A stretch of 63,711 nt of DNA, counting the filler, from Reticulomyxa filosa (taxonomy: Eukaryota > Protista > Foraminifera), in assembly GCA_000512085.1 (NCBI GenBank). It is 18 parts of 18 records of this genome, joined end to end, with 100 filler letters (N's around TTAATTAATTAA, not from the genome) between each part and the next. Parts side by side here need not be neighbours in the genome. Positions count along the whole stretch, not along the records: positions 1 to 9,181 come from ASPP01028742.1; 17 more parts are not named here. The stretch is one strand, 5' to 3'. The notes beneath the pieces were generated by a model. That model was not told the DNA's origin, did no database searches, and saw only the letters and a list, made by a program, of their open reading frames with translations. Of the stretch, positions 1 to 9,181 are shown piece by piece (the first letter of the stretch is position 1; every line of letters begins with the position of its first letter). The translations under genes and the position numbers were made by a program.

Positions 1-1327
1 TTTTTTTCGTACAACATTTTTTTAAGAAAGATAACAGTGCTCTTGCAGATATCTGGTAAGTTTTGGATACACTGCACCTATTTTTCATTTGAATATATTG
101 ACGTATACAAAAAATCACACAAGTTGTAATACACATATACATACTGACAAAATTGAATTCCAATTGCTTAAGTTGACTTGTAATAGTTTTTTGGTTGTCA
201 GATCAGACCCATTGATATTCTTCAAGAGATCAAGATAATTATTGTCAATTGTCGGGTTAATAAATTTTTTGACTGTTTCATTCAAATTATCTTCACGAAT
301 TAGAATATCCCCGAGTTCAATTGAAGATTGCAGACAATTAAATGCAACCAAAACGTCAAATTGGATATTTTTCCAGACAATTGTAACATAAGGTGATTCG
401 CCTATTATATACTCGTGTTCGACACGGTATCCCTCTTTGGAGATTTTTTGTGCAATCTGTTTGACCAATGCAACCAAGCCCAAAAAAAATGGGCGATAGA
501 CCATGTTTTCAATAATGCTGTGACTTGCCATTTGAAGTGTATTATGTGGAACGCTAAGCAGAAATACTACATTTCCATTGTACGAATCAGCAATTGCTGT
601 TCCTTTTTGAACACTTCCTCCCAATATCATTCCAGCCAAATTTGCATTTCCCCAATCGCTGTTATCTTTACATAAATTGAATACATTGGATAATTTCATC
701 TCTTTATATAGATTTTGTGCAGCTTCAATCAAAGCTTGGATTTGATGCTTGCGGATTTTATATCGATTCACTGCGGCTATCACATTCGAAAATGCCATCG
801 ATTTCGAGGATATACCGAAGTCAATAAAACGTATATCGTGGATAATCTTATCCACTTTTTTAGGTGTTTCTTTGACAGATAGTATGGAATCAACATTTGT
901 GCTCGAGTGCTGTTCAATATTTTCGCCACTTCAAAAAAAACAACAGACCAATTCAAAAACAAATCTTAAAACTATCACACTTTTTTTTTGCAATATTTAA
1001 ATAAGGGAAAGAAAAAAAAAGAAACAGAAACTTTGCTTCCTTTTTGGGATCTCTATTTTACCTTCTTACGCTAATTGCGACAACAGGCAGTGGCTCTATT
1101 GCATCCGCTTTACGCTTACCATTGATAGCTTCTAACAATCGTGTCTGCAGGTCCGTTGGTAGTTTCGTTTTTCGGAAGATCGTCACCCATAATTCGTACG
1201 GTAATTTGATCAAACAGGACACTGTTGTACAGTATTCTTCAGCCAATAACATACATATTACTTCGGCATAATCCAAGAGCAGTTCTTTCAAGAAATTATG
1301 CATTTCGTTATTTTTTTTTTTAATCAT
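1..1327 (-). CDS. OAS-like nucleotidyltransferase with N-terminal SAM-like exon, 3' truncated by contig start; DxD replaced by NxN
   Basis: Exon 1 (1327-1062) spliced via GT(1061-1060)/AG(930-929) reads in frame into the 115..855 ORF. Motifs GGSVQKGTAIADSYNGNVVFLL and FDVLVAFN match OAS GGS.KGT.....D.DLV.FL and FDVLPAFD. The next exon (about 77-1) reads VQCIQNLPDICKSTVIFLKK, like OAS F....P..LKSLIRLVK. Confidence 0.8.
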
Positions 1328-3205
1328 TGAAAAAATTTAATCTCGGGATTATAAAAAAAGGGATTCAATAAAAAACCCGTTGTTACCAACATTGTTTTTT
1401 GAAAGTTTTCTTTGGAATCATTTGTTGACTTTCCAATCAACTCTACAGATATTTTATACAATTTCTTTAAAAAAAAAGGAAACATCTCTTTAATATCCGT
1501 TCATTATCTTCACTATATGAAAAGTAATTAGAATTTTGATATTTGCATATTTTGAAATAGCAATACATTTGTATAATCTCTTCCTTGTTATCGAGTGGAT
1601 GCGCACAAAAGGTAGACTTTTCTTTGTTCTTCGGATCTGCCATTTGTGAACATTTCAAAATTTGTGAGTTGGGATTTTGATTATCAGTTCTGTCCATCGG
1701 TATCGCAAATAGATATCGATCATTATTTAGAGCCTATGGACATTGATTGTTATTTAGATGCTATGAATATCGACCTCCGTCCTGATACGATGGATAGAAC
1801 TGATAATCAAAATCCCAACTCACAAATTTTGAAATGTTCACAAATGGCAGATCCGAAGAAACAAAAAAAAATGTATTACTATTTCAAAATATGCAAATAT
1901 CAAAATTCTAATTACTTTTCATATAGTGAAGATAATGAACCGGATATTAAAGAGATATCTAGACATGGATTATAAAAAAACGGGTTCCAACAAAAAACCC
2001 GTTGTTACCAACATTGTTTTTTGAAAGTTTTCTTTGGAATTATTTGTTGACTTTCCAATTTCATAAAAAAAGAGGAGATTAAATTTTTTCAATGACTAAA
2101 AAAACTGATGACGAAATGGACAATGGTAAACGTAAAGCGGATGTCGCAATTAGCGTAAGAAGGTAAAAGAGATCAAAAAGGGGCAAATTTCCAGTCTTCC
2201 CTTATTTAAATATCGCAAAAAAATGTTAGAGTTTTAATTTACCTATTTGTTTTTGAATGACCTATTTTTGTTTTTTTTGAAGTGACGAAAATACTGAACA
2301 ATACTCGATCACAAATACTGATCTCATACGACTGTCAAAGAAATACCTAAAAAAGTGGATAAAATTCTCCAAGTATACGTTTTATTGATTTAGGTGAACA
2401 AGACGACAGTGACAAAGACAACGAAGACGATAATGATGTGTCCTCGAAATTAAGTGCATTTTCGAATGTGAGAGCCACCGTGAAGCGATATAAAATCAGC
2501 AACTATCAAATCCGAGCTGTTGCGGAAGCTGCACAAAGTTTATGTAAATATATGAACTCATCAATGTATTCCATTTATTTGAGAATAACAGTGATTGGGG
2601 AAAGGCAAATTTCGCTGGAATAATATTGGGAGGCAGTGTTCAAAAAGGAACATCAATTGCTGACTCGTACGATGAAGATTTAGTATTTCTGCTTAACGTT
2701 CCATATGATATACTTAAAACGGCACATCACTGCATTATTGAAAACATGGTCTATCACACATTTTTTTTGCGCTTATCCGCATTGGTCAAACGGATGGCAC
2801 AGGAAATCTCCGAAGGGGGATACTGTATCGAACGCGAGTATACAATAAGCAAGACACCTTATGTTGCAATTGTCTGGAAAAATATCCAATTTGATGTTTT
2901 GGTTGCATTTAATTGTTTGACATCTTCAATTGAACTCTGGGACATTCTGATTTGGGGAGAAAATTTGAATGAAACAGTCAAAAAACTTAGTAACTCAGCA
3001 ATTGACAATAATTATCTTGATGTCTTGAAGAATATCAATGGGTCTGATCTGACAACCAAAAAATTATACAAGTCAACTTAAGCAATTTTGTCGTATGTAC
3101 ATATTTATACATTCAAATGAAAAATAGGTACAGTTTATCAAAAACTTCCCAGATATATGCAAGAGCACTGTTATCTTTCTTAAAAAAATGTGGCAAAAAA
3201 AAAAA
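1..3205. repeat. Large inverted duplication (palindrome); arms 1-1704 and 1784-~3205, spacer 1705-1783
   Basis: 1627-1699 is the reverse complement of 1788-1860 with one mismatch. Similarity continues with indels through both OAS-like genes to the contig start. Confidence 0.92.
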
Positions 3206-4031
3206 AAAGTTTAATAAACTTCCAAAGAGCTACTCATTGGAAATAATCGTTGCAAGTGTTCACAAAACAGTCGAAAGAAGAAAAAAGCAAGAAGAAGAAA
3301 AAAAAGAAGATGACAATGAAGAAAAAAAAAATAAATCTAATAATGAAAAAAAAGAAAGGAAAAAAGTAGAAGAACGAGAAAAAGATCAAATCAATCAGCT
3401 ATTGAAAGAAGTTCTCAAGGCAATGATTAAATTTAGTAAAGAAAAGATTATTGTCCACAAGAAGGCATGTTCAAATTCGACGAGTTACAAAATTTTATCA
3501 TGAATATGTTAACGGACATAAGTGCAAATCAAATCGCCCAATTAACGAGAGAAATGGAAGCAATGCACCCCGAACAAACAATATTTATTATTGATCCATA
3601 TTTGCCAGGCTGTTCTTTTTCTATTCTTTATAAATAAATTCATAAAAACCATTTTTTTTCACACTTTACACTTATTACAATGAACAGTCTTTTATTCGCA
3701 ATTCATTCCCGTTGTAGAACATGACTTTACAAAATGGGTGGATCTATATGTGGAACTCGAGTTCATTCTACATAAGTTGGAAGAGTATGGGTCACGTGAT
3801 CTATATTTTACATTTGATCAACAATATGGACTAATTTGATCGCTTTCCGGTCTCAAAAAGAGTATGGATGAAGTTTCTTCTAACACCAACAAAATAGCTA
3901 ACAGTATAGACAAAATGAGTTCGAGTATAGATAATATGAGTTCGAGTATGAAGGACATAAATTCGAATATGGAGAAAATGACAGCAAAGTTAGATACCTT
4001 AAGTTCCGCGAATACAAAGCATATTGCATAA
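2092..4031 (+). pseudogene. OAS-like nucleotidyltransferase, second copy, frameshifted (probable pseudogene)
   Basis: Reverse-complement paralogue of 1-1327. It carries GGSVQKGTSIADSYDEDLVFLL, FDVLVAFN, VQFIKNFPDICKSTVIFLKK, KLPKSYSLEIIV (OAS LPPQYALELLT) and IFIIDPYLP (OAS PVILDPADP). Several 1-bp indels relative to the left copy (about 2330, 2372, 2560) break the frame. Confidence 0.8.
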
Positions 4032-4659
4032 ATTACTTCATTTTTCTCAATGATCTATTTTCAATTGTGAGCTTTTTTAAATACTTATGTCAAAAATTTA
4101 TCTTTCAAATTTAAAGCAATTTCAATTTTATTGCTTAAAATATAATACTCAAAAAAAAAGCTCTAAACGAATCACTATAACAGTCTTATTGATGAAAAAC
4201 TTTTTTTAATAATACAAAAAGTTAAGTTAATTTTCAACGATTCAAAAATATCTAGAAAATGGCATTTATGATTTTTCAAATTTCATGGAAAAGAGATTTG
4301 TAGTCACTAAATTGAAACATTTATCAAGATATTACCAACATCTCCCAAACAGTTGTCATGATATTGACTGAAAACTAATTGGATTTTTACTAAGAAATTG
4401 TTTCAACGGTCAATGATTCATCCATATTTTGGGTTGAGAGCAATCGATTTTCATTGAGTTATTGGCGACTTGTTTGCAATAAAATCGTTGACGTCTTCCT
4501 TCTGGTTCGGTTGTAAAGTCCAATTTTTATCAAAGCAAGACCGCTGTTGAAGATTATGTAGTTTTTTAAAGTTTTATTCAATTATTCAAACAAAAAAAAG
4601 AATATAATTAAGTTTATCCAAAAACTACATTGTAAAAAAAAAATTTATGTGCTTGTTTA

Positions 4660-5960
4660 TAGGATATTTGGACAGTGTATTTTTTATCGAGAGTTGTGTT
4701 GAATCGATTGCGTGGGGAAAGCTTTGTGATTACTTTGGTCGGAAGCCAATTTTGTTGGTTGGGCTATTTGCAAGTCGCATTACCAGTGCTATATTTGGCT
4801 TCAGTGTCGTTTCCAATGGCCGCTGTTATTCGTTTTTTTTGGTGTGGTGATGACTATACGTATACAGTATGTGCAGCCACCAAAAAAAAAAAAATTATAG
4901 ATCTAATGTATGATACATTTTTATTTTTTTTGTAATGATAAAATGTGAATGAAACAAATAAAGGGGAGCATTGGACGGTAATACAGGCGTAGTGGAGCGA
5001 TGATGGGGGTGGCTTGTCTCTCATTTTATTTTTCATTGTTGCTACACTGGTATGTGAAACTTCAAAAAAAAAAACTCAAAATCGACAAACACAAAATGAT
5101 GCAACGACTGTTCCCCCTTAAAAACACTGATGAAAGATCGCCGCCAGAAAAAAGAACCATTTGTGATGTTATTAAATCAAAAACGTATATGGGTTACAAC
5201 TGTGTTTTATGGATATGCATCCTTTTTAGCTACTGGTTTGCAAGCTATGGTTCCATTATGGGTATGAGTTGTATTATACATATATACGTATACGTATATA
5301 AATAACAATTAAAAAAACAAATAATAAATAAGTAGTTACAAAAATGGTTTATTTTTAATTTCCTTAAAAAAAAAACTAATGCGAAAGGTGTTGGAAAAAA
5401 AAAGAACCAATGGATTTGATTGGAAAGAAAGTGAGATTATTACGGTATTTGCAATAGCTGGTCCTTGTTACACGATATCGCAATTGGTACTGTTTCTAAA
5501 GTTTGTCAAGTGGTTTGGCTACATTGGCACAAGTAAAATAAACTCATTTGTTTATGGCGTTTTGATTATACTTATCTCGCATTTGTCTGTGTTTCGCTAT
5601 CTACCAACAAATATTGCCATTGCTATTCTCGTCTTAGCAATGGTGGCATTGTTTGTTTTAAGAGTCATGGTTTTCACATGCTGATGCTTCTGGTTCTTTT
5701 TTTTTTTTTTTTGTAAACAATCCTTTTTCTTTCTATCTTTTTTTTGACTATCTAATCGGTCAATTTTGTGATTGTGATGGATTAGACGTTCGTGCAACTG
5801 CAAATGGAATTGGACAGACATTTGGGTCAATAAGTCGCCTATTAGCACCTGTAATATTTATTCGTATTGTGTTCTTCGCATTGACGCCATGAGAGACTTT
5901 GGTCGCTTGTACTTGCGTATGTGGCGCGCTGATGTCAAATGGTTCTTGTAAAGCATATGT
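4660..5960 (+). pseudogene. MFS transporter (ZIFL/tetracycline-antiporter-like), fragmented
   Basis: MFS motif A-like WGKLCDYFGRKPILLVGL. Later exons give NGFDWKESEI..VFAIAG and ATANGIGQTFGSISRLLAP, with frameshifts and stops between pieces. Confidence 0.65.
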
Positions 5961-6029
5961 AGGTTTTTGCATTCTCTGTACATTTCTCAAAAAAACATAC
6001 ATATATATACGTATACATATGTATATAAA

Positions 6030-7086
6030 AGAGTTGCTTTGAGAGACTCGACGGATATTGAACTGGGTTTATTATTTGTGGTAATCTTTGGATTGAGCCC
6101 AGTGTTATTTCATTACCTGTTTTTAGTATACGCATTGGAGCGTTACAACTCATTGACTGCGTACTTGGCAGACGACTTTGGCATTGTACGCGACGTACGT
6201 GCACCAACCGACGCATCGTTGCAATTGCTTCAATCTGCCAACTTTGCCTTTGATCTGTCTTCACCGACGCACGTGCATGGTCAACTGCATGCAAACGGTG
6301 CAGTCTCATTCAAACATGCACTCGCAATTGCAGTCGTATTTACAATCGCAGTTGCAATTGCCTCGGCAGTCACGAGCCGAAGGAGAATATTGTAAGCCAT
6401 AATGACACCATAGAAACAGAACTCTCTCTGAATAAAGAGCAGCCAGTGCCGCCACTTGGAAGAAGACAAAACAAGTTTGATTTCATTCTTGCAAAAACAG
6501 AGGCAAAAGTTGGAATTGTCCCGGCGTGCTGTTTTTCCTTGCCGCCGAGTTGGTATTGTTTTGGGTCGCTTATAATCCTTATCAGTTCATTGCGAAGCAC
6601 AGTGGCTTTGCAATATTTATCGTCGTCGCAATCAGCCATGGTCTTAGCGTCATCTTCTCCGGCATGTTGACGTACTTGCATTTCACCAATTTGCATTTGC
6701 ATTTGGACATGTTCTTTTCATGGACGCACAGTCTCATATTTTTAGAAAAGGAACTCGATGACTTTTCATTGAAACGACAATATGCGCATTTGGACTTTGA
6801 CCGATCTTGCTTTTTAACATGTTTGCAAGAACTTTGCTCCGATTATTTGATCGCGCGTTTCATTCAAACGCGACTCCAAAGTCCTATTGCCGACGTCGTT
6901 AATTTGTACCTTTTTGGCTATGTCTTTCAGTCCGATTATTTGTTGCACCAAAGTCCGACTCCAACTTTCCGATCGTGGCAGCCCATTACACTGGATCAAC
7001 ATTGTCAAGTCCAACATTCGTATTCTGGAGATGAACAGCAAACTATCTCGTTGCTCAAACAAATATGTGCCTTGTCGTCCAATTGA
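6030..7086 (+). CDS. Hypothetical multi-pass membrane protein (frame breaks)
   Basis: GC-richer coding-like block with hydrophobic segments in ORFs 5967..6395 and 6526..7086. No family recognised. Confidence 0.4.
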
Positions 7087-8872
7087 ACTCTACTTTATGT
7101 ATTGTGTGTATTGCCTTCGATTGTTTTTTATTCGTTTGAAAATAAAATGTACAGATTTTTTTACATTTGTCAATTGTGTGCAGTTTTTTTATTGTTCAAA
7201 AAAAAAAAAAGATATTGGCAATGTTTTTTTTAAAACAAATTTCCATTTTTAAAAAAATACAAGAATTAGTAGTTCAAAAAAAGGGTTATATAATATAATA
7301 CGAATATCGTCATTGTAACTTGTTGTCCAACACAAACGAAAAAAATGATAAATTGCAAAAAAAGTTGACTTGTACAGCCAACATGCTAAACGTCAAATCA
7401 TTAGTTTAATCTTGCACCATTGGCTGGATACGCGCATGTATATAACGATGATTAAATCAAAACAACATACATATCATCGAGGGAAATAGTTGTGATGACA
7501 TTGCATTAGCACATGAATATAAAAATAAGCAAGTTGATAAGTGATCAATTAGTATATTCTTGTTTTTTTTGTGTAGAAATGTTATTATTTGATTGCAATG
7601 TCATACATGTTATATAAGATACTTTATTAAATTCATTGAAAAAAGAATGGAGCAAATGTTCTCTTCAACAAACTAGTTTTAGTAGAAACTAAAAACAGCA
7701 AAATTAATCTTTAACAAACTGCTAATAAAATAAATGAATTAATTTTACAATAATAAAAACATTAGGTGCAGATTTTGAGCAAATATTTGTAAATATGGAA
7801 AAGCAATGTTGCAAACAATAACTTCAAAAAACTATATATGTCGAATAAAACAAGTAGGACAACTTTCTTTATAACATGTGTATGGAAGAAAAATAAGGCA
7901 ACATCATAAAAGACCGACAAGTTATGAGTAGATTGTGCAATTTTCGAGCTATATTAAAAGAAAAAAAATTTATGTATACATTTATAATTGATACACACAA
8001 AAAAATAAAATACAATTGATTACAAAAACAATATTTAAAATCATTCTCGAACAATCGAAATTTCCGCATTTGAAAACATTTTTTAAAATTATGTCTACAA
8101 GTCGTGTAGAATCCAAAAGTGTTTCCTTTAAAAATGTTTTGAAGTATGAGAGAAATTGTAATTTTGTCTAAATTTTCAAAATTTCAGAAAAATAAAAATC
8201 TGTGTGAATGGGATTGATATAATCTATCTTTTTTTTGAATTTTCCTGACAATCCTTTTTTTTGAGATGAAAACTCTTGTCAATAATAAAAATATTATTGT
8301 TGCTATGAGAAGACCACTGAAATATTGACGTTTAAGATAAGATTATTATCAACTACTGTAGAATGAAATAAAATTTTACATATCTGTAATTAATGTGTCT
8401 TTATTGTTTGAATTTTGTAAATTTTTTAAAAAGTTGCTGTTATTCTTTCCCATAACTATAACATTTTTTAAGTATTTTCAAAGAATATTTATTGAATATT
8501 TTAAGTCAAAAATAACAATAACTTAGCGCAATAATTCTTAAAGGCTTTTATTTTGGAAAGAGAAAATAGTTATTAATTTTTTAATTAAAATAACAAAATA
8601 TGAGTTATAATTCTTTGCAATGTACTGTTTCTAGATCATGTAATATATTTTGTTTCTTTGTTTTACAATCCTTTTTTAAGGGGCCATCAAAAAGAAAATT
8701 CTATTTAAAAAAACTATTGCGACTATTATATCAATAAAAAATCTCTGAAAACATAGAAAACATTCTCCACAAGAACAGGGCGGGACAAGGGACTTTAAAA
8801 AAAAAATTGTCTTTTTCGTCAAATTTCCGCACTTTTAATATCAATCAAATAGATGACTGAGTTTATTCCCAG

Positions 8873-9100
8873 GTGTCTCATTTGGCGCAATGTAAAAATT
8901 CTGCAACGAACGTACAAATTTGGTAGTAAACCAATATTGACACCTGTCATCACCGAAAAATATGGTGGATGGTTTGGCAAGACTTTTGGAAGAAATTCAA
9001 AAGATATGCAAAACGCTGTTTCTGGAGCGTTTGTTGGAATGAGTGAAGTCGTATTGTTGCCGTTGGATGTCTTAAAAATTAAATCACAAACAAATCCTGG
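8873..9100 (+). CDS. GGC1: Mitochondrial carrier exon, GDP/GTP carrier (Ggc1/Yhm1-like)
   Basis: KILQRTYKFGSKP...SGAFVGMSEVVLLPLDVLKIKSQTNP closely follows yeast Ggc1 KVLQRVYKYGGQP...GEIVLLPLDVLKIKRQTNP. The carrier signature PxDxxK is present. Confidence 0.8.
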
Positions 9101-9181
9101 TATGCTTTTATGTAGTGTTGCTTAACACTTGTAGTGTGTTATATTTCAAAAAAATATATGTATACAAATCATAAAAAAAAA

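What the first reader, a model, noticed from the sequence alone, without database searches (positions are those of the whole stretch)
1..4031. Head-to-head palindromic pair of OAS-like nucleotidyltransferases in a non-animal eukaryote: candidate nucleotide-signalling immune locus
Seen: two divergently transcribed paralogues form the arms of one inverted duplication. Between them they carry OAS hallmarks in order (GGS.KGT...DxDLV.L, FDVL.AF, F.K.FP..CKS...LKK, LP.SY.LE, IIDP). Established: OAS/cGAS/CD-NTase enzymes make signalling nucleotides in antiviral defence, and the OAS effector RNase L is a vertebrate protein. Inference: this protist has an evolving OAS-type system with an unknown activator, product and effector.
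Basis: partly seen in the sequence, partly recalled or inferred. Interest (0 to 1): 0.88.

Follow-up and report, generated by a model that had tools for sequence, protein, structure and literature searches.

The report
OAS-like gene pair in a foraminiferan
Two diverged head-to-head copies of an OAS-type (antiviral nucleotidyltransferase) gene in the protist Reticulomyxa filosa are real. However, the family was already catalogued there, one copy is a decayed pseudogene and the other has lost two catalytic residues, so this is probably not a working signalling locus.

Summary
The window is a whole 9,181-bp contig of Reticulomyxa filosa.

The OAS assignment also holds. A profile built only from R. 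filosa paralogues finds OAS2 and OAS1, and no other nucleotidyltransferase, among PDB sequences. A confident model of a paralogue matches OAS structures first (Z 15). Profile-profile comparison with true OAS units gives 97% probability.

It is not new. Culbertson & Levin 2023 already placed RFI_32460 in their CD-NTase tree and scored R. filosa as OAS-positive.

The functional reading is weakened:
- The right copy keeps the D-x-D...D triad. It has at least seven frame-breaking indels, six of them outside long homopolymers, and has lost 65 N-terminal codons.
- The left copy is frame-intact over 1,127 nt, but its D-x-D reads N-G-N.
- dN/dS between the copies is about 1 in the catalytic lobe.

New details:
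- The family matches on 49 contigs, and most examined members lack catalytic acids.
- Three more loci are head-to-head inverted pairs.
- The left copy has a tentative SAM-like N-terminal exon.
- Contig C18685 probably continues the left arm.

No reads were available to test the assembly directly.

The parts
1..1699 (-). Left arm of the inverted duplication, truncated by the contig end at position 1. It probably continues in contig C18685.
   Evidence: C18685 aligns to window 4553..3282 on the opposite strand at 87.2% over 1,302 nt and ends in the same low-complexity stretch.
1062..1327 (-). Left gene (RFI_32459) exon 1: 88 codons plus 2 nt. It forms a helical N-terminal domain that is SAM-like only as a lead.
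   Evidence: ORF. GT donor at 1061-1060, read. Atlas feature hits to SAM_NCD1, SAM_TNK and SAM_1/2 score 0.83-0.89. The equivalent part of paralogue P0006 folds as five helices at pLDDT above 92. Pfam and PDB sequence searches found nothing.
929..1061 (-). Left gene intron 1 (GT...AG, phase 2).
   Evidence: Read. The reading frame is continuous across it.
145..928 (-). Left gene exon 2: the nucleotidyltransferase lobe. GGSVQKGT lies at 598-621, N-G-N replaces D-x-D at 568-582, and FDVLVAF lies at 340-360. The frame is intact.
   Evidence: Donor GTATGT at 144-139. The exon end is conserved in paralogues and used in database model P0006.
78..144 (-). Left gene intron 2.
   Evidence: GTATGT...AG, read. 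Homologous to right-copy 3093-3127.
1..77 (-). Left gene exon 3, first 25 codons (VQCIQNLPDICKSTVIFLKKMLYEK), open to the contig end.
1700..1787 (.). Unique spacer at the centre of the palindrome.
1499..1940 (.). Innermost arms plus spacer (95-99% identity). This stretch occurs only on this contig.
1788..4553 (+). Right arm of the duplication. It is paired inside the window up to 3204 and beyond that with C18685.
2092..2162 (+). Right gene (RFI_32460) exon 1. It is shortened by an in-frame loss of 195 nt, which removes the SAM-like part.
2283..3092 (+). Right gene exon 2: the nucleotidyltransferase lobe with GGSVQKGT (2629-2652), D-E-D (2668-2682) and FDVLVAF (2890-2910). It is broken by 1-nt deletions at 2331/2, 2373/4, 2561/2 and 3066/7 and by an 11-nt deletion at 3082/3.
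   Evidence: The outgroup paralogue L002 shares the left copy's frame.
3128..3611 (+). Right gene exon 3: the C-terminal helical lobe with FIKNFPDICKS, LPKSYSLE, a Lys/Glu-rich insert and FIIDPYLPG. It is read in three frames because of shifts at the A14 run 3195-3208 and at 3455/6.
3688..3839 (+). Right gene last exon, ending at stop TGA 3837-3839.
   Evidence: Database model P0003. Paralogue matches.

Best explanation
This is a genuine, old inverted (head-to-head) duplication of an OAS-superfamily CD-NTase gene in the foraminiferan Reticulomyxa filosa. It belongs to a large lineage-specific family.

Left copy (RFI_32459):
- Its reading frame has been kept intact.
- It carries an extra, possibly SAM-like, N-terminal helical domain.
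- It has lost two of the three metal-binding aspartates (N-G-N).
- It is therefore most likely a non-catalytic OAS-fold protein, in the manner of OASL or the inactive domains of OAS2 and OAS3. It would act by binding or scaffolding rather than by making 2'-5' oligoadenylate.

Right copy (RFI_32460):
- It keeps the catalytic triad.
- It has lost the N-terminal domain and accumulated at least seven frame-breaking indels.
- It is therefore a decaying pseudogene.

Shown here: the duplication, the family assignment, the frame breaks and the residue changes. Inferred: loss of catalysis, non-enzymatic function, and any immune role.
For: Family assignment:
- A profile made only of R. filosa paralogues (A3) hits OAS2 9h1z (E 4.4e-9), pig OAS1 1px5 (7.9e-5) and human OAS1 4ig8 (1e-4) among 177,635 PDB sequences. 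It hits no other NTase at E up to 10. The alignments run from the GGS motif to LPxxYxLELL.
- The same profile against 1.84 billion representatives returns 26 proteins. All five that carry Pfam domains are multi-unit OAS proteins with OAS1_C and NTP_transf_2.
- hhalign of the family against true OAS units gives 97.3% probability, E 2e-11, over 207 columns.
- The AF2 model of paralogue P0006 has pLDDT 76.5. Its top eight Foldseek hits are all OAS1, OAS2, OAS3 or OASL. VIA gives Z 15.0 and 14.9 for OAS1, against 13.9 for CdnD and about 13 for cGAS.
- Culbertson & Levin 2023 include RFI_32460 and score R. filosa as OAS = 1.

Reality of the palindrome:
- The arms are 88% identical with many indels.
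- C18685 extends the left arm at the same 87% identity.
- Three other family loci are head-to-head inverted pairs.
- By contrast, one short inverted repeat was found in 15 arbitrary contigs.

Right copy a pseudogene:
- Seven frame breaks, six of them not at long homopolymers.
- The left copy has none in 1,127 nt.
- The outgroup shares the left copy's frame.

Left copy inactive:
- YNGNV aligns to the OAS1 D-A-D.

Relaxed constraint:
- dN/dS is 1.0 in the N-lobe.
- Both branches show about 3.2-3.7 nonsynonymous changes per synonymous change.
Against: - No reads or RNA data could be laid on the locus. The frame breaks, the N-G-N codons and the palindrome junction all rest on one draft assembly.
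- With omega about 1 on its own branch, the left copy could also be a young pseudogene that has not yet been hit by an indel.
- The database gene model for the right copy (P0003) removes some breaks by calling introns. That has not been excluded experimentally.
- Pfam's own OAS1_C and NTP_transf_2 models do not reach E of 10 on these proteins.
- The only confident structure model is of a paralogue about 39% identical, not of a window protein. The window's P0003 model had pLDDT 55.
- Asp-to-Asn does not prove complete loss of activity.
Confidence: 0.66

Rival explanations
1. This is the first reader's view: an active OAS-type nucleotide-signalling immune locus. At least one copy is a working synthetase. 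In this view the right copy's triad is functional, and its apparent frame breaks are sequencing errors or unusual short introns.
For: - The right copy keeps GGS, D-E-D and the third D.
- One break lies in an A14 run, where draft assemblies err.
- The database model P0003 yields a 398-aa protein by calling introns.
- Other family members keep the triad: RFI_34063, P0007, P0010 and the C15496 ORF.
Against: - Six of the seven breaks are not in long homopolymers. One of these is an 11-nt deletion between short direct repeats.
- The left arm on the same contig has no frame break.
- The P0003 model drops conserved segments and reads FIKNFPDICKS in the wrong frame.
- The right copy has lost 65 N-terminal codons.
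- dN/dS is about 1.
Confidence: 0.12
2. Both copies are pseudogenes. The left one has simply not yet acquired a frame break.
For: - On the left branch there are 22 nonsynonymous and 6 synonymous changes, which is about the neutral ratio.
- Two catalytic aspartates are lost.
Against: - If indels fell on the left copy at the right copy's rate (at least seven), the chance of none in 1,127 nt plus the C18685 exons is about 1 in 1,000. This is my Poisson estimate.
- The C-terminal exons show omega of about 0.39.
- Other family members without catalytic acids keep long open frames, so a catalytically dead state seems to be maintained in this family.
Confidence: 0.15
3. Assembly artefact: the palindrome is a fold-back chimera or a mis-join of two separate paralogous loci.
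For: - This is a draft, highly fragmented assembly of 50,809 contigs.
- The innermost arms are 95-99% identical.
- No reads were available.
Against: - A fold-back chimera gives identical arms. Here they differ by 12% plus many indels, and they flank a unique 88-nt spacer.
- The same head-to-head inverted layout recurs at C45437, C25666 and C4733.
- C18685 continues the left arm collinearly.
Confidence: 0.05
4. Housekeeping or other NTase (poly(A) polymerase, TUTase, CCA enzyme, NF45/NF90 DZF, Nrap) rather than OAS.
For: - DZF, Nrap, GLD-2 and PAP appear lower in the structure lists: Foldseek E 1.5e-4 to 2.5e-3, and VIA Z 12.9-13.2 for the two that VIA lists, DZF and Nrap. This is about 2 Z units below OAS1.
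Against: - The sequence profile hits only OAS in the PDB.
- The profile hits only OAS-domain proteins in the big library.
- OAS gives the best E-values, the best Z and the highest identity, 17-19%.
Confidence: 0.03

Closest known systems
Vertebrate OAS1 (2'-5'-oligoadenylate synthetase 1; PDB 1px5, 4ig8, 4rwn)
   Same: - Two-lobe Pol-beta NTase fold followed by a helical lobe.
- Collinear motifs: GGSxxKGT, D-x-D-L-V-x-F-L, F-D-V-L-x-A-F, L-x-K-x-W and LPxxYxLELL.
- Best sequence-profile and structural match.
   Different: - 17-19% identity.
- Pfam OAS1_C and NTP_transf_2 are not reached.
- The left copy has N-G-N at the catalytic dyad.
- There is a Lys/Glu-rich insert in the C-lobe and an extra N-terminal helical domain.
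- dsRNA activation and product are unknown.
- No RNase L is known in this organism.
OASL and the inactive domains of OAS2 and OAS3 (PDB 4xq7, 4s3n, 9h1z)
   Same: - OAS fold retained while catalytic residues are lost, as in the left copy and most R. filosa paralogues examined.
- These are among the top structural hits.
   Different: - OASL carries C-terminal ubiquitin-like domains.
- OAS2 and OAS3 fuse dead and live units in one chain.
- Here the units are separate genes, and the extra domain is N-terminal and possibly SAM-like.
R. filosa OAS-superfamily sequences in Culbertson & Levin 2023 (PLoS Biol, PMC10732462)
   Same: - EP00480_P007837 has the same trimmed sequence as P0003, the right copy.
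- EP00480_P006249 is RFI_34063.
- The species is scored OAS = 1.
   Different: - The paper lists five R. filosa sequences.
- As far as I could find by term searches of its text and supplements, it does not describe the locus structure, the pseudogenisation, the loss of catalytic residues or the size of the expansion (49 contigs here).
Bacterial CD-NTases (CdnD and CdnC of CBASS; PDB 7d4u, 7ljl, 6u7b) and animal cGAS
   Same: Same CD-NTase/Mab21-type fold. For CdnD and cGAS, Z is 13-14, within 1-2 units of OAS1; CdnC appears only in the Foldseek list.
   Different: - No sequence-profile hit at E up to 10.
- No CBASS-type operon partners.
- Eukaryotic introns are present.

Membership tests
OAS superfamily of CD-NTases | Pol-beta-type nucleotidyltransferase fold with a following helical lobe, closest to OAS among solved structures. 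| tested here: met
   Model of paralogue P0006 (pLDDT 76.5). The top eight Foldseek hits are OAS1, OAS2, OAS3 or OASL. VIA gives Z 15.0, rmsd 3.6, 246 residues aligned to pig OAS1. Caveat: the window's own model (P0003) was poor, with pLDDT 55.
OAS superfamily of CD-NTases | Significant sequence-profile similarity to OAS that extends into the OAS1_C helices. | tested here: met
   Family profile against the PDB: OAS2 at 4.4e-9 and OAS1 at 8e-5, with no other NTase. hhalign against OAS units: 97.3% over 207 columns, reaching template position 249 of 383.
OAS superfamily of CD-NTases | Match to Pfam OAS1_C (PF10421) above its cut-off. | tested here: not met
   No OAS1_C or NTP_transf_2 hit at E up to 1 for the single window ORFs, up to 10 for P0001-P0003 and up to 0.01 for P0006. 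The published hmmscan table likewise shows only a weak NTP_transf_2 hit for RFI_34063.
OAS superfamily of CD-NTases | Placement in the OAS clade of a CD-NTase phylogeny. | not tested
   Taken from Culbertson & Levin 2023. Their catalogue scores OAS = 1 for EP00480, and their main tree groups the R. filosa sequences with dinoflagellate, diatom and animal sequences. Placement shifts in their alternative trees.
Catalytically active 2'-5'-oligoadenylate synthetase | G-S motif plus the three metal-binding acids, which I recall as D75, D77 and D148 of human OAS1. | tested here: not met
   Left copy: GGS present, N-G-N instead of D-x-D, third D present. Right copy: all present, but the gene is frame-broken.
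Catalytically active 2'-5'-oligoadenylate synthetase | dsRNA-dependent synthesis of 2'-5'-linked oligoadenylates. | not testable with these tools
   Needs a biochemical assay.
OAS-RNase L pathway | A 2-5A-activated effector (ankyrin, pseudokinase and KEN RNase) in the same genome. | tested here: inconclusive
   PF06479 was not found in the assembly. The tool's control genomes were also silent, and the assembly is incomplete.
SAM (sterile alpha motif) domain, for exon 1 of the left copy | Five-helix bundle recognised by SAM profiles. | tested here: inconclusive
   A five-helix N-terminal domain at pLDDT above 92 in P0006. Atlas feature scores of 0.83-0.89 to SAM families, and TM 0.54-0.58 to Ank-SAM proteins. 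No Pfam or PDB sequence hit.

The most novel reading that the evidence does not exclude
R. filosa maintains a large repertoire (49 contigs or more) of OAS-fold proteins that have mostly lost catalysis. They are repeatedly organised as head-to-head palindromic gene pairs whose inner arms are homogenised by gene conversion, and some are fused to a SAM-like oligomerisation domain. This would be a birth-and-death family of non-enzymatic nucleic-acid sensors or adaptors, a protist counterpart of OASL. The window would show one pair caught with one partner dying.
Probability: 0.25. Interest if true: 0.6.

Novelty: new member of a known kind. Interest (0 to 1): 0.33.

Why it matters
OAS-like CD-NTases outside animals are a current topic in the evolution of innate immunity. 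None from a protist has a known activator, product or effector.

This locus does not open that question, because neither copy looks like a working enzyme and the family assignment is already published.

What it adds is descriptive:
- In a foraminiferan the OAS fold has expanded to dozens of loci.
- Most examined members have lost the catalytic acids yet keep open frames.
- Several members sit in inverted head-to-head pairs.

That points experimenters towards the few triad-retaining members (for example RFI_34063 and the C15496 ORF) for enzymology. It also points towards a possible non-catalytic role for the rest.

Tried and rejected
- Pfam on single ORFs and on database models gave no NTase or OAS hit. 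This was superseded by the profile searches.
- A single-sequence PDB search with P0003 gave OAS1 only at E 1.2.
- AF2 of P0003 with nine sequences was poor (pLDDT 55). Its Foldseek list mixed cGAS, OAS1, PAP and CCA at E about 1e-3, so I did not rely on it.
- The look-up of sequencing runs listed no run. Neither the fold-back test nor an expression test could be done.
The tally rests on about 22 members.
- The idea that the pair is a dead-plus-live two-gene analogue of OAS2 was rejected. In the three other inverted pairs both partners lack catalytic acids.
- The inner palindrome is not a dispersed repeat or MITE.
- The KEN-domain search was uninformative.
- The ORF at 3864-4031 is only 55% conserved and is interrupted in C18685, so I treated it as non-coding.
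Full report
**What the window is.** Positions 1-9181 are the whole of contig C28742 of a 102-Mb, 50,809-contig assembly. The sources of the encoded proteins name the organism as the foraminiferan Reticulomyxa filosa. The two genes are RFI_32459 (partial) and RFI_32460.

**The observation.**
- The repeat finder reports a set of collinear inverted matches covering 1-1699 against 1788-3204.
- A global alignment of the reverse-complemented left arm to the right arm gives 88% identity over 1,370 aligned nt, with dozens of indels and an 88-nt unique spacer.
- The innermost 70-80 nt blocks are 95-99% identical. The coding parts are 80-88% identical.

**Gene models.** I searched exon by exon by reference and otherwise used the database gene models P0001, P0003 and P0006.
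- The left gene (minus strand) reads exon 1 at 1327..1062, exon 2 at 928..145 and exon 3 at 77..1, with GT...AG introns.
- It is open for all 1,127 coding nt up to the contig end.
- The exon 2 end (...NLSNWNSILS followed by GTATGT) is conserved in paralogues and is used in the database model of the C17936 paralogue.
- The right gene reads 2092-2162, 2283-3092, 3128-3611 and 3688-3839.

**Frame breaks in the right copy, relative to the left copy and to the outgroup paralogue on C33577.**
- 1-nt deletions at 2331/2, 2373/4, 2561/2 and 3066/7.
- An 11-nt deletion between short direct repeats at 3082/3.
- A shift in the A14 run at 3195-3208.
- A 1-nt deletion at 3455/6, seen against C18685.
- An in-frame loss of 195 nt from exon 1.
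- Only the A14 site is a typical homopolymer-error site, and the left arm on the same contig has no break.
- I therefore read the right copy as a true pseudogene. The published model P0003 hides the breaks by calling introns, and it reads the FIKNFPDICKS segment in the wrong frame.

**Is it OAS?** Pfam alone says nothing. Four other tests agree that it is.
- A profile built only from R. filosa paralogues (A3) was searched against all PDB sequences. It finds human OAS2 (E 4.4e-9), pig OAS1 (7.9e-5) and human OAS1 (1e-4), and no other nucleotidyltransferase at E up to 10. The alignments run from GGS through D-x-D and FDVLxAF to LPxxYxLELL.
- The same profile against 1.84 billion representatives gives 26 hits. 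The five with Pfam domains are all multi-unit OAS proteins (OAS1_C, NTP_transf_2, ubiquitin). Their significance comes from summing several 12-26-bit units.
- hhalign of a broader family alignment against true OAS units gives 97.3% probability and E 2e-11 over 207 columns, reaching into the OAS1_C helices.
- A confident AF2 model of paralogue P0006 (pLDDT 76.5) has OAS3, OAS1, OAS2 and OASL as its top eight Foldseek hits (E 1e-5 to 1e-4). Its VIA Z is 15.0 and 14.9 for OAS1, ahead of CdnD (13.9), Nrap (13.2), cGAS and OASL (13.0) and DZF (12.9).

**Prior knowledge.**
- Culbertson & Levin 2023 (PMC10732462) report OAS-like CD-NTases in 8 of 12 eukaryotic supergroups.
- Their supplementary alignments contain EP00480_Reticulomyxa_filosa_P007837. 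Its trimmed sequence is that of P0003, the right copy here.
- They also contain P006249, which is RFI_34063.
- Their catalogue scores EP00480 as OAS = 1.
- The family assignment is therefore already published. A text search for oligoadenylate plus Rhizaria finds only that work.

**Catalytic competence.**
- In the profile alignment, the OAS1 D-A-D aligns with D-G-D of the family consensus.
- The right copy has D-E-D and the left copy has N-G-N. Both keep the third Asp.
- Among about 22 family members inspected, five keep all three acids: RFI_34063, RFI_32460, P0007, P0010 and the C15496 ORF. The rest have substitutions such as S-C-D/N, E-S-S, N-S-A or C-G-Y/H.

**Selection.**
- Between the two copies dN/dS is 1.0 over 208 codons of the N-lobe, with dS 0.158.
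- With C33577 as outgroup, the left branch has 6 synonymous and 22 nonsynonymous changes. The right branch has 5 and 16. Both are near neutral.
- The C-terminal exons (right copy against C18685) give omega 0.39 on few sites.
- The contrast of zero against at least seven frame breaks argues that the left frame is being maintained.

**Extent and context.**
- C18685 aligns to window 4553..3282 in left-arm orientation at 87.2% over 1,302 nt. It ends in the same Lys/Glu-rich low-complexity stretch in which the window begins.
- It is very probably the missing continuation of the left arm, with a gap of about 78 nt. That would make arms of about 2.8 kb. Its two C-terminal exons are frame-intact.
- Genome-wide, the profile gives 71 matches on 49 contigs, mostly in long open frames.
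- Three more contigs (C45437, C25666, C4733) carry head-to-head inverted pairs with 71-86% complementary arms.
- By contrast, 15 arbitrary contigs totalling 42 kb contain one 82-nt inverted repeat.
- The layout is thus a recurrent property of this family, which also argues against an assembly artefact.
- Direct read evidence could not be obtained, because no sequencing run was listed.

**N-terminal domain.**
- Exon 1 of the left copy and its counterpart in P0006 form a five-helix domain (pLDDT above 92).
- Language-model features and Atlas structure neighbours point to SAM-type domains, but below the tool's reliability line.
- Pfam and PDB sequence searches are blank.
- Related first exons occur at 13 loci or more, mostly on contigs without an NTase match.
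- I report it as SAM-like only tentatively.

**Verdict.** This is a real locus with a correct family call, but the family call is already known. At this locus there is one pseudogene and one probably non-catalytic paralogue, rather than an active signalling system. The modestly new points are the palindromic organisation, the scale of the expansion and the widespread loss of catalytic residues.

Noticed in passing
L015 (G000:C18685:2325-3603) against window 3282-4553: A separate contig matches the right arm in left-arm orientation at 87.2% over 1,302 nt and ends in the same low-complexity stretch where the window starts. It is probably the missing 3' part of the left gene. Its last two exons are frame-intact.
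   Followed up: partly
window 1353-1437 and 1975-2059: An 85-nt piece just upstream of both start codons lies in direct orientation (94% identity) inside the otherwise inverted arms. This implies a local inversion in one copy's promoter-proximal region.
   Followed up: no
window 1499-1699 and 1788-1940: The innermost arms are 95-99% identical, against 80-88% for the coding arms. This suggests gene conversion near the palindrome centre. The stretch is unique to this contig.
   Followed up: partly
G000 contigs C45437, C25666 and C4733 (L034-L036): Three more head-to-head inverted pairs of the same family. Both partners have long open frames, but both lack all catalytic acids (C-G-Y and H at the motif positions).
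   Followed up: partly
window 4647-5900: Exons of a major-facilitator-type transporter (MFS_1, E 8e-6 on the first ORF) lie downstream of the duplication on the plus strand.
   Followed up: partly
window 5967-7086: A stretch of higher G+C content (about 43%, against about 30% elsewhere) with ORFs of 142 and 186 aa. They have no Pfam match.
   Followed up: no
window 8853-9125: Start of a mitochondrial-carrier-like gene (weak Mito_carr hit, E 0.05) that runs towards the contig end.
   Followed up: no
L029-L033 and eight other G000 contigs: The SAM-like first exon of the left gene has relatives at 13 loci or more in the genome. Most are on contigs without an NTase match, as if it were a shuffled N-terminal module.
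   Followed up: partly
L057 (TARA Oceans scaffold, 18,962 bp): P0026, one of only two relatives not from R. filosa besides canonical OAS proteins, lies on a scaffold of 21-28% G+C packed with small ORFs that have no Pfam hits. It may be a giant virus or a very AT-rich protist.
   Followed up: no
It is only 55% conserved and is interrupted by stops in C18685, so it is probably not coding.
   Followed up: partly
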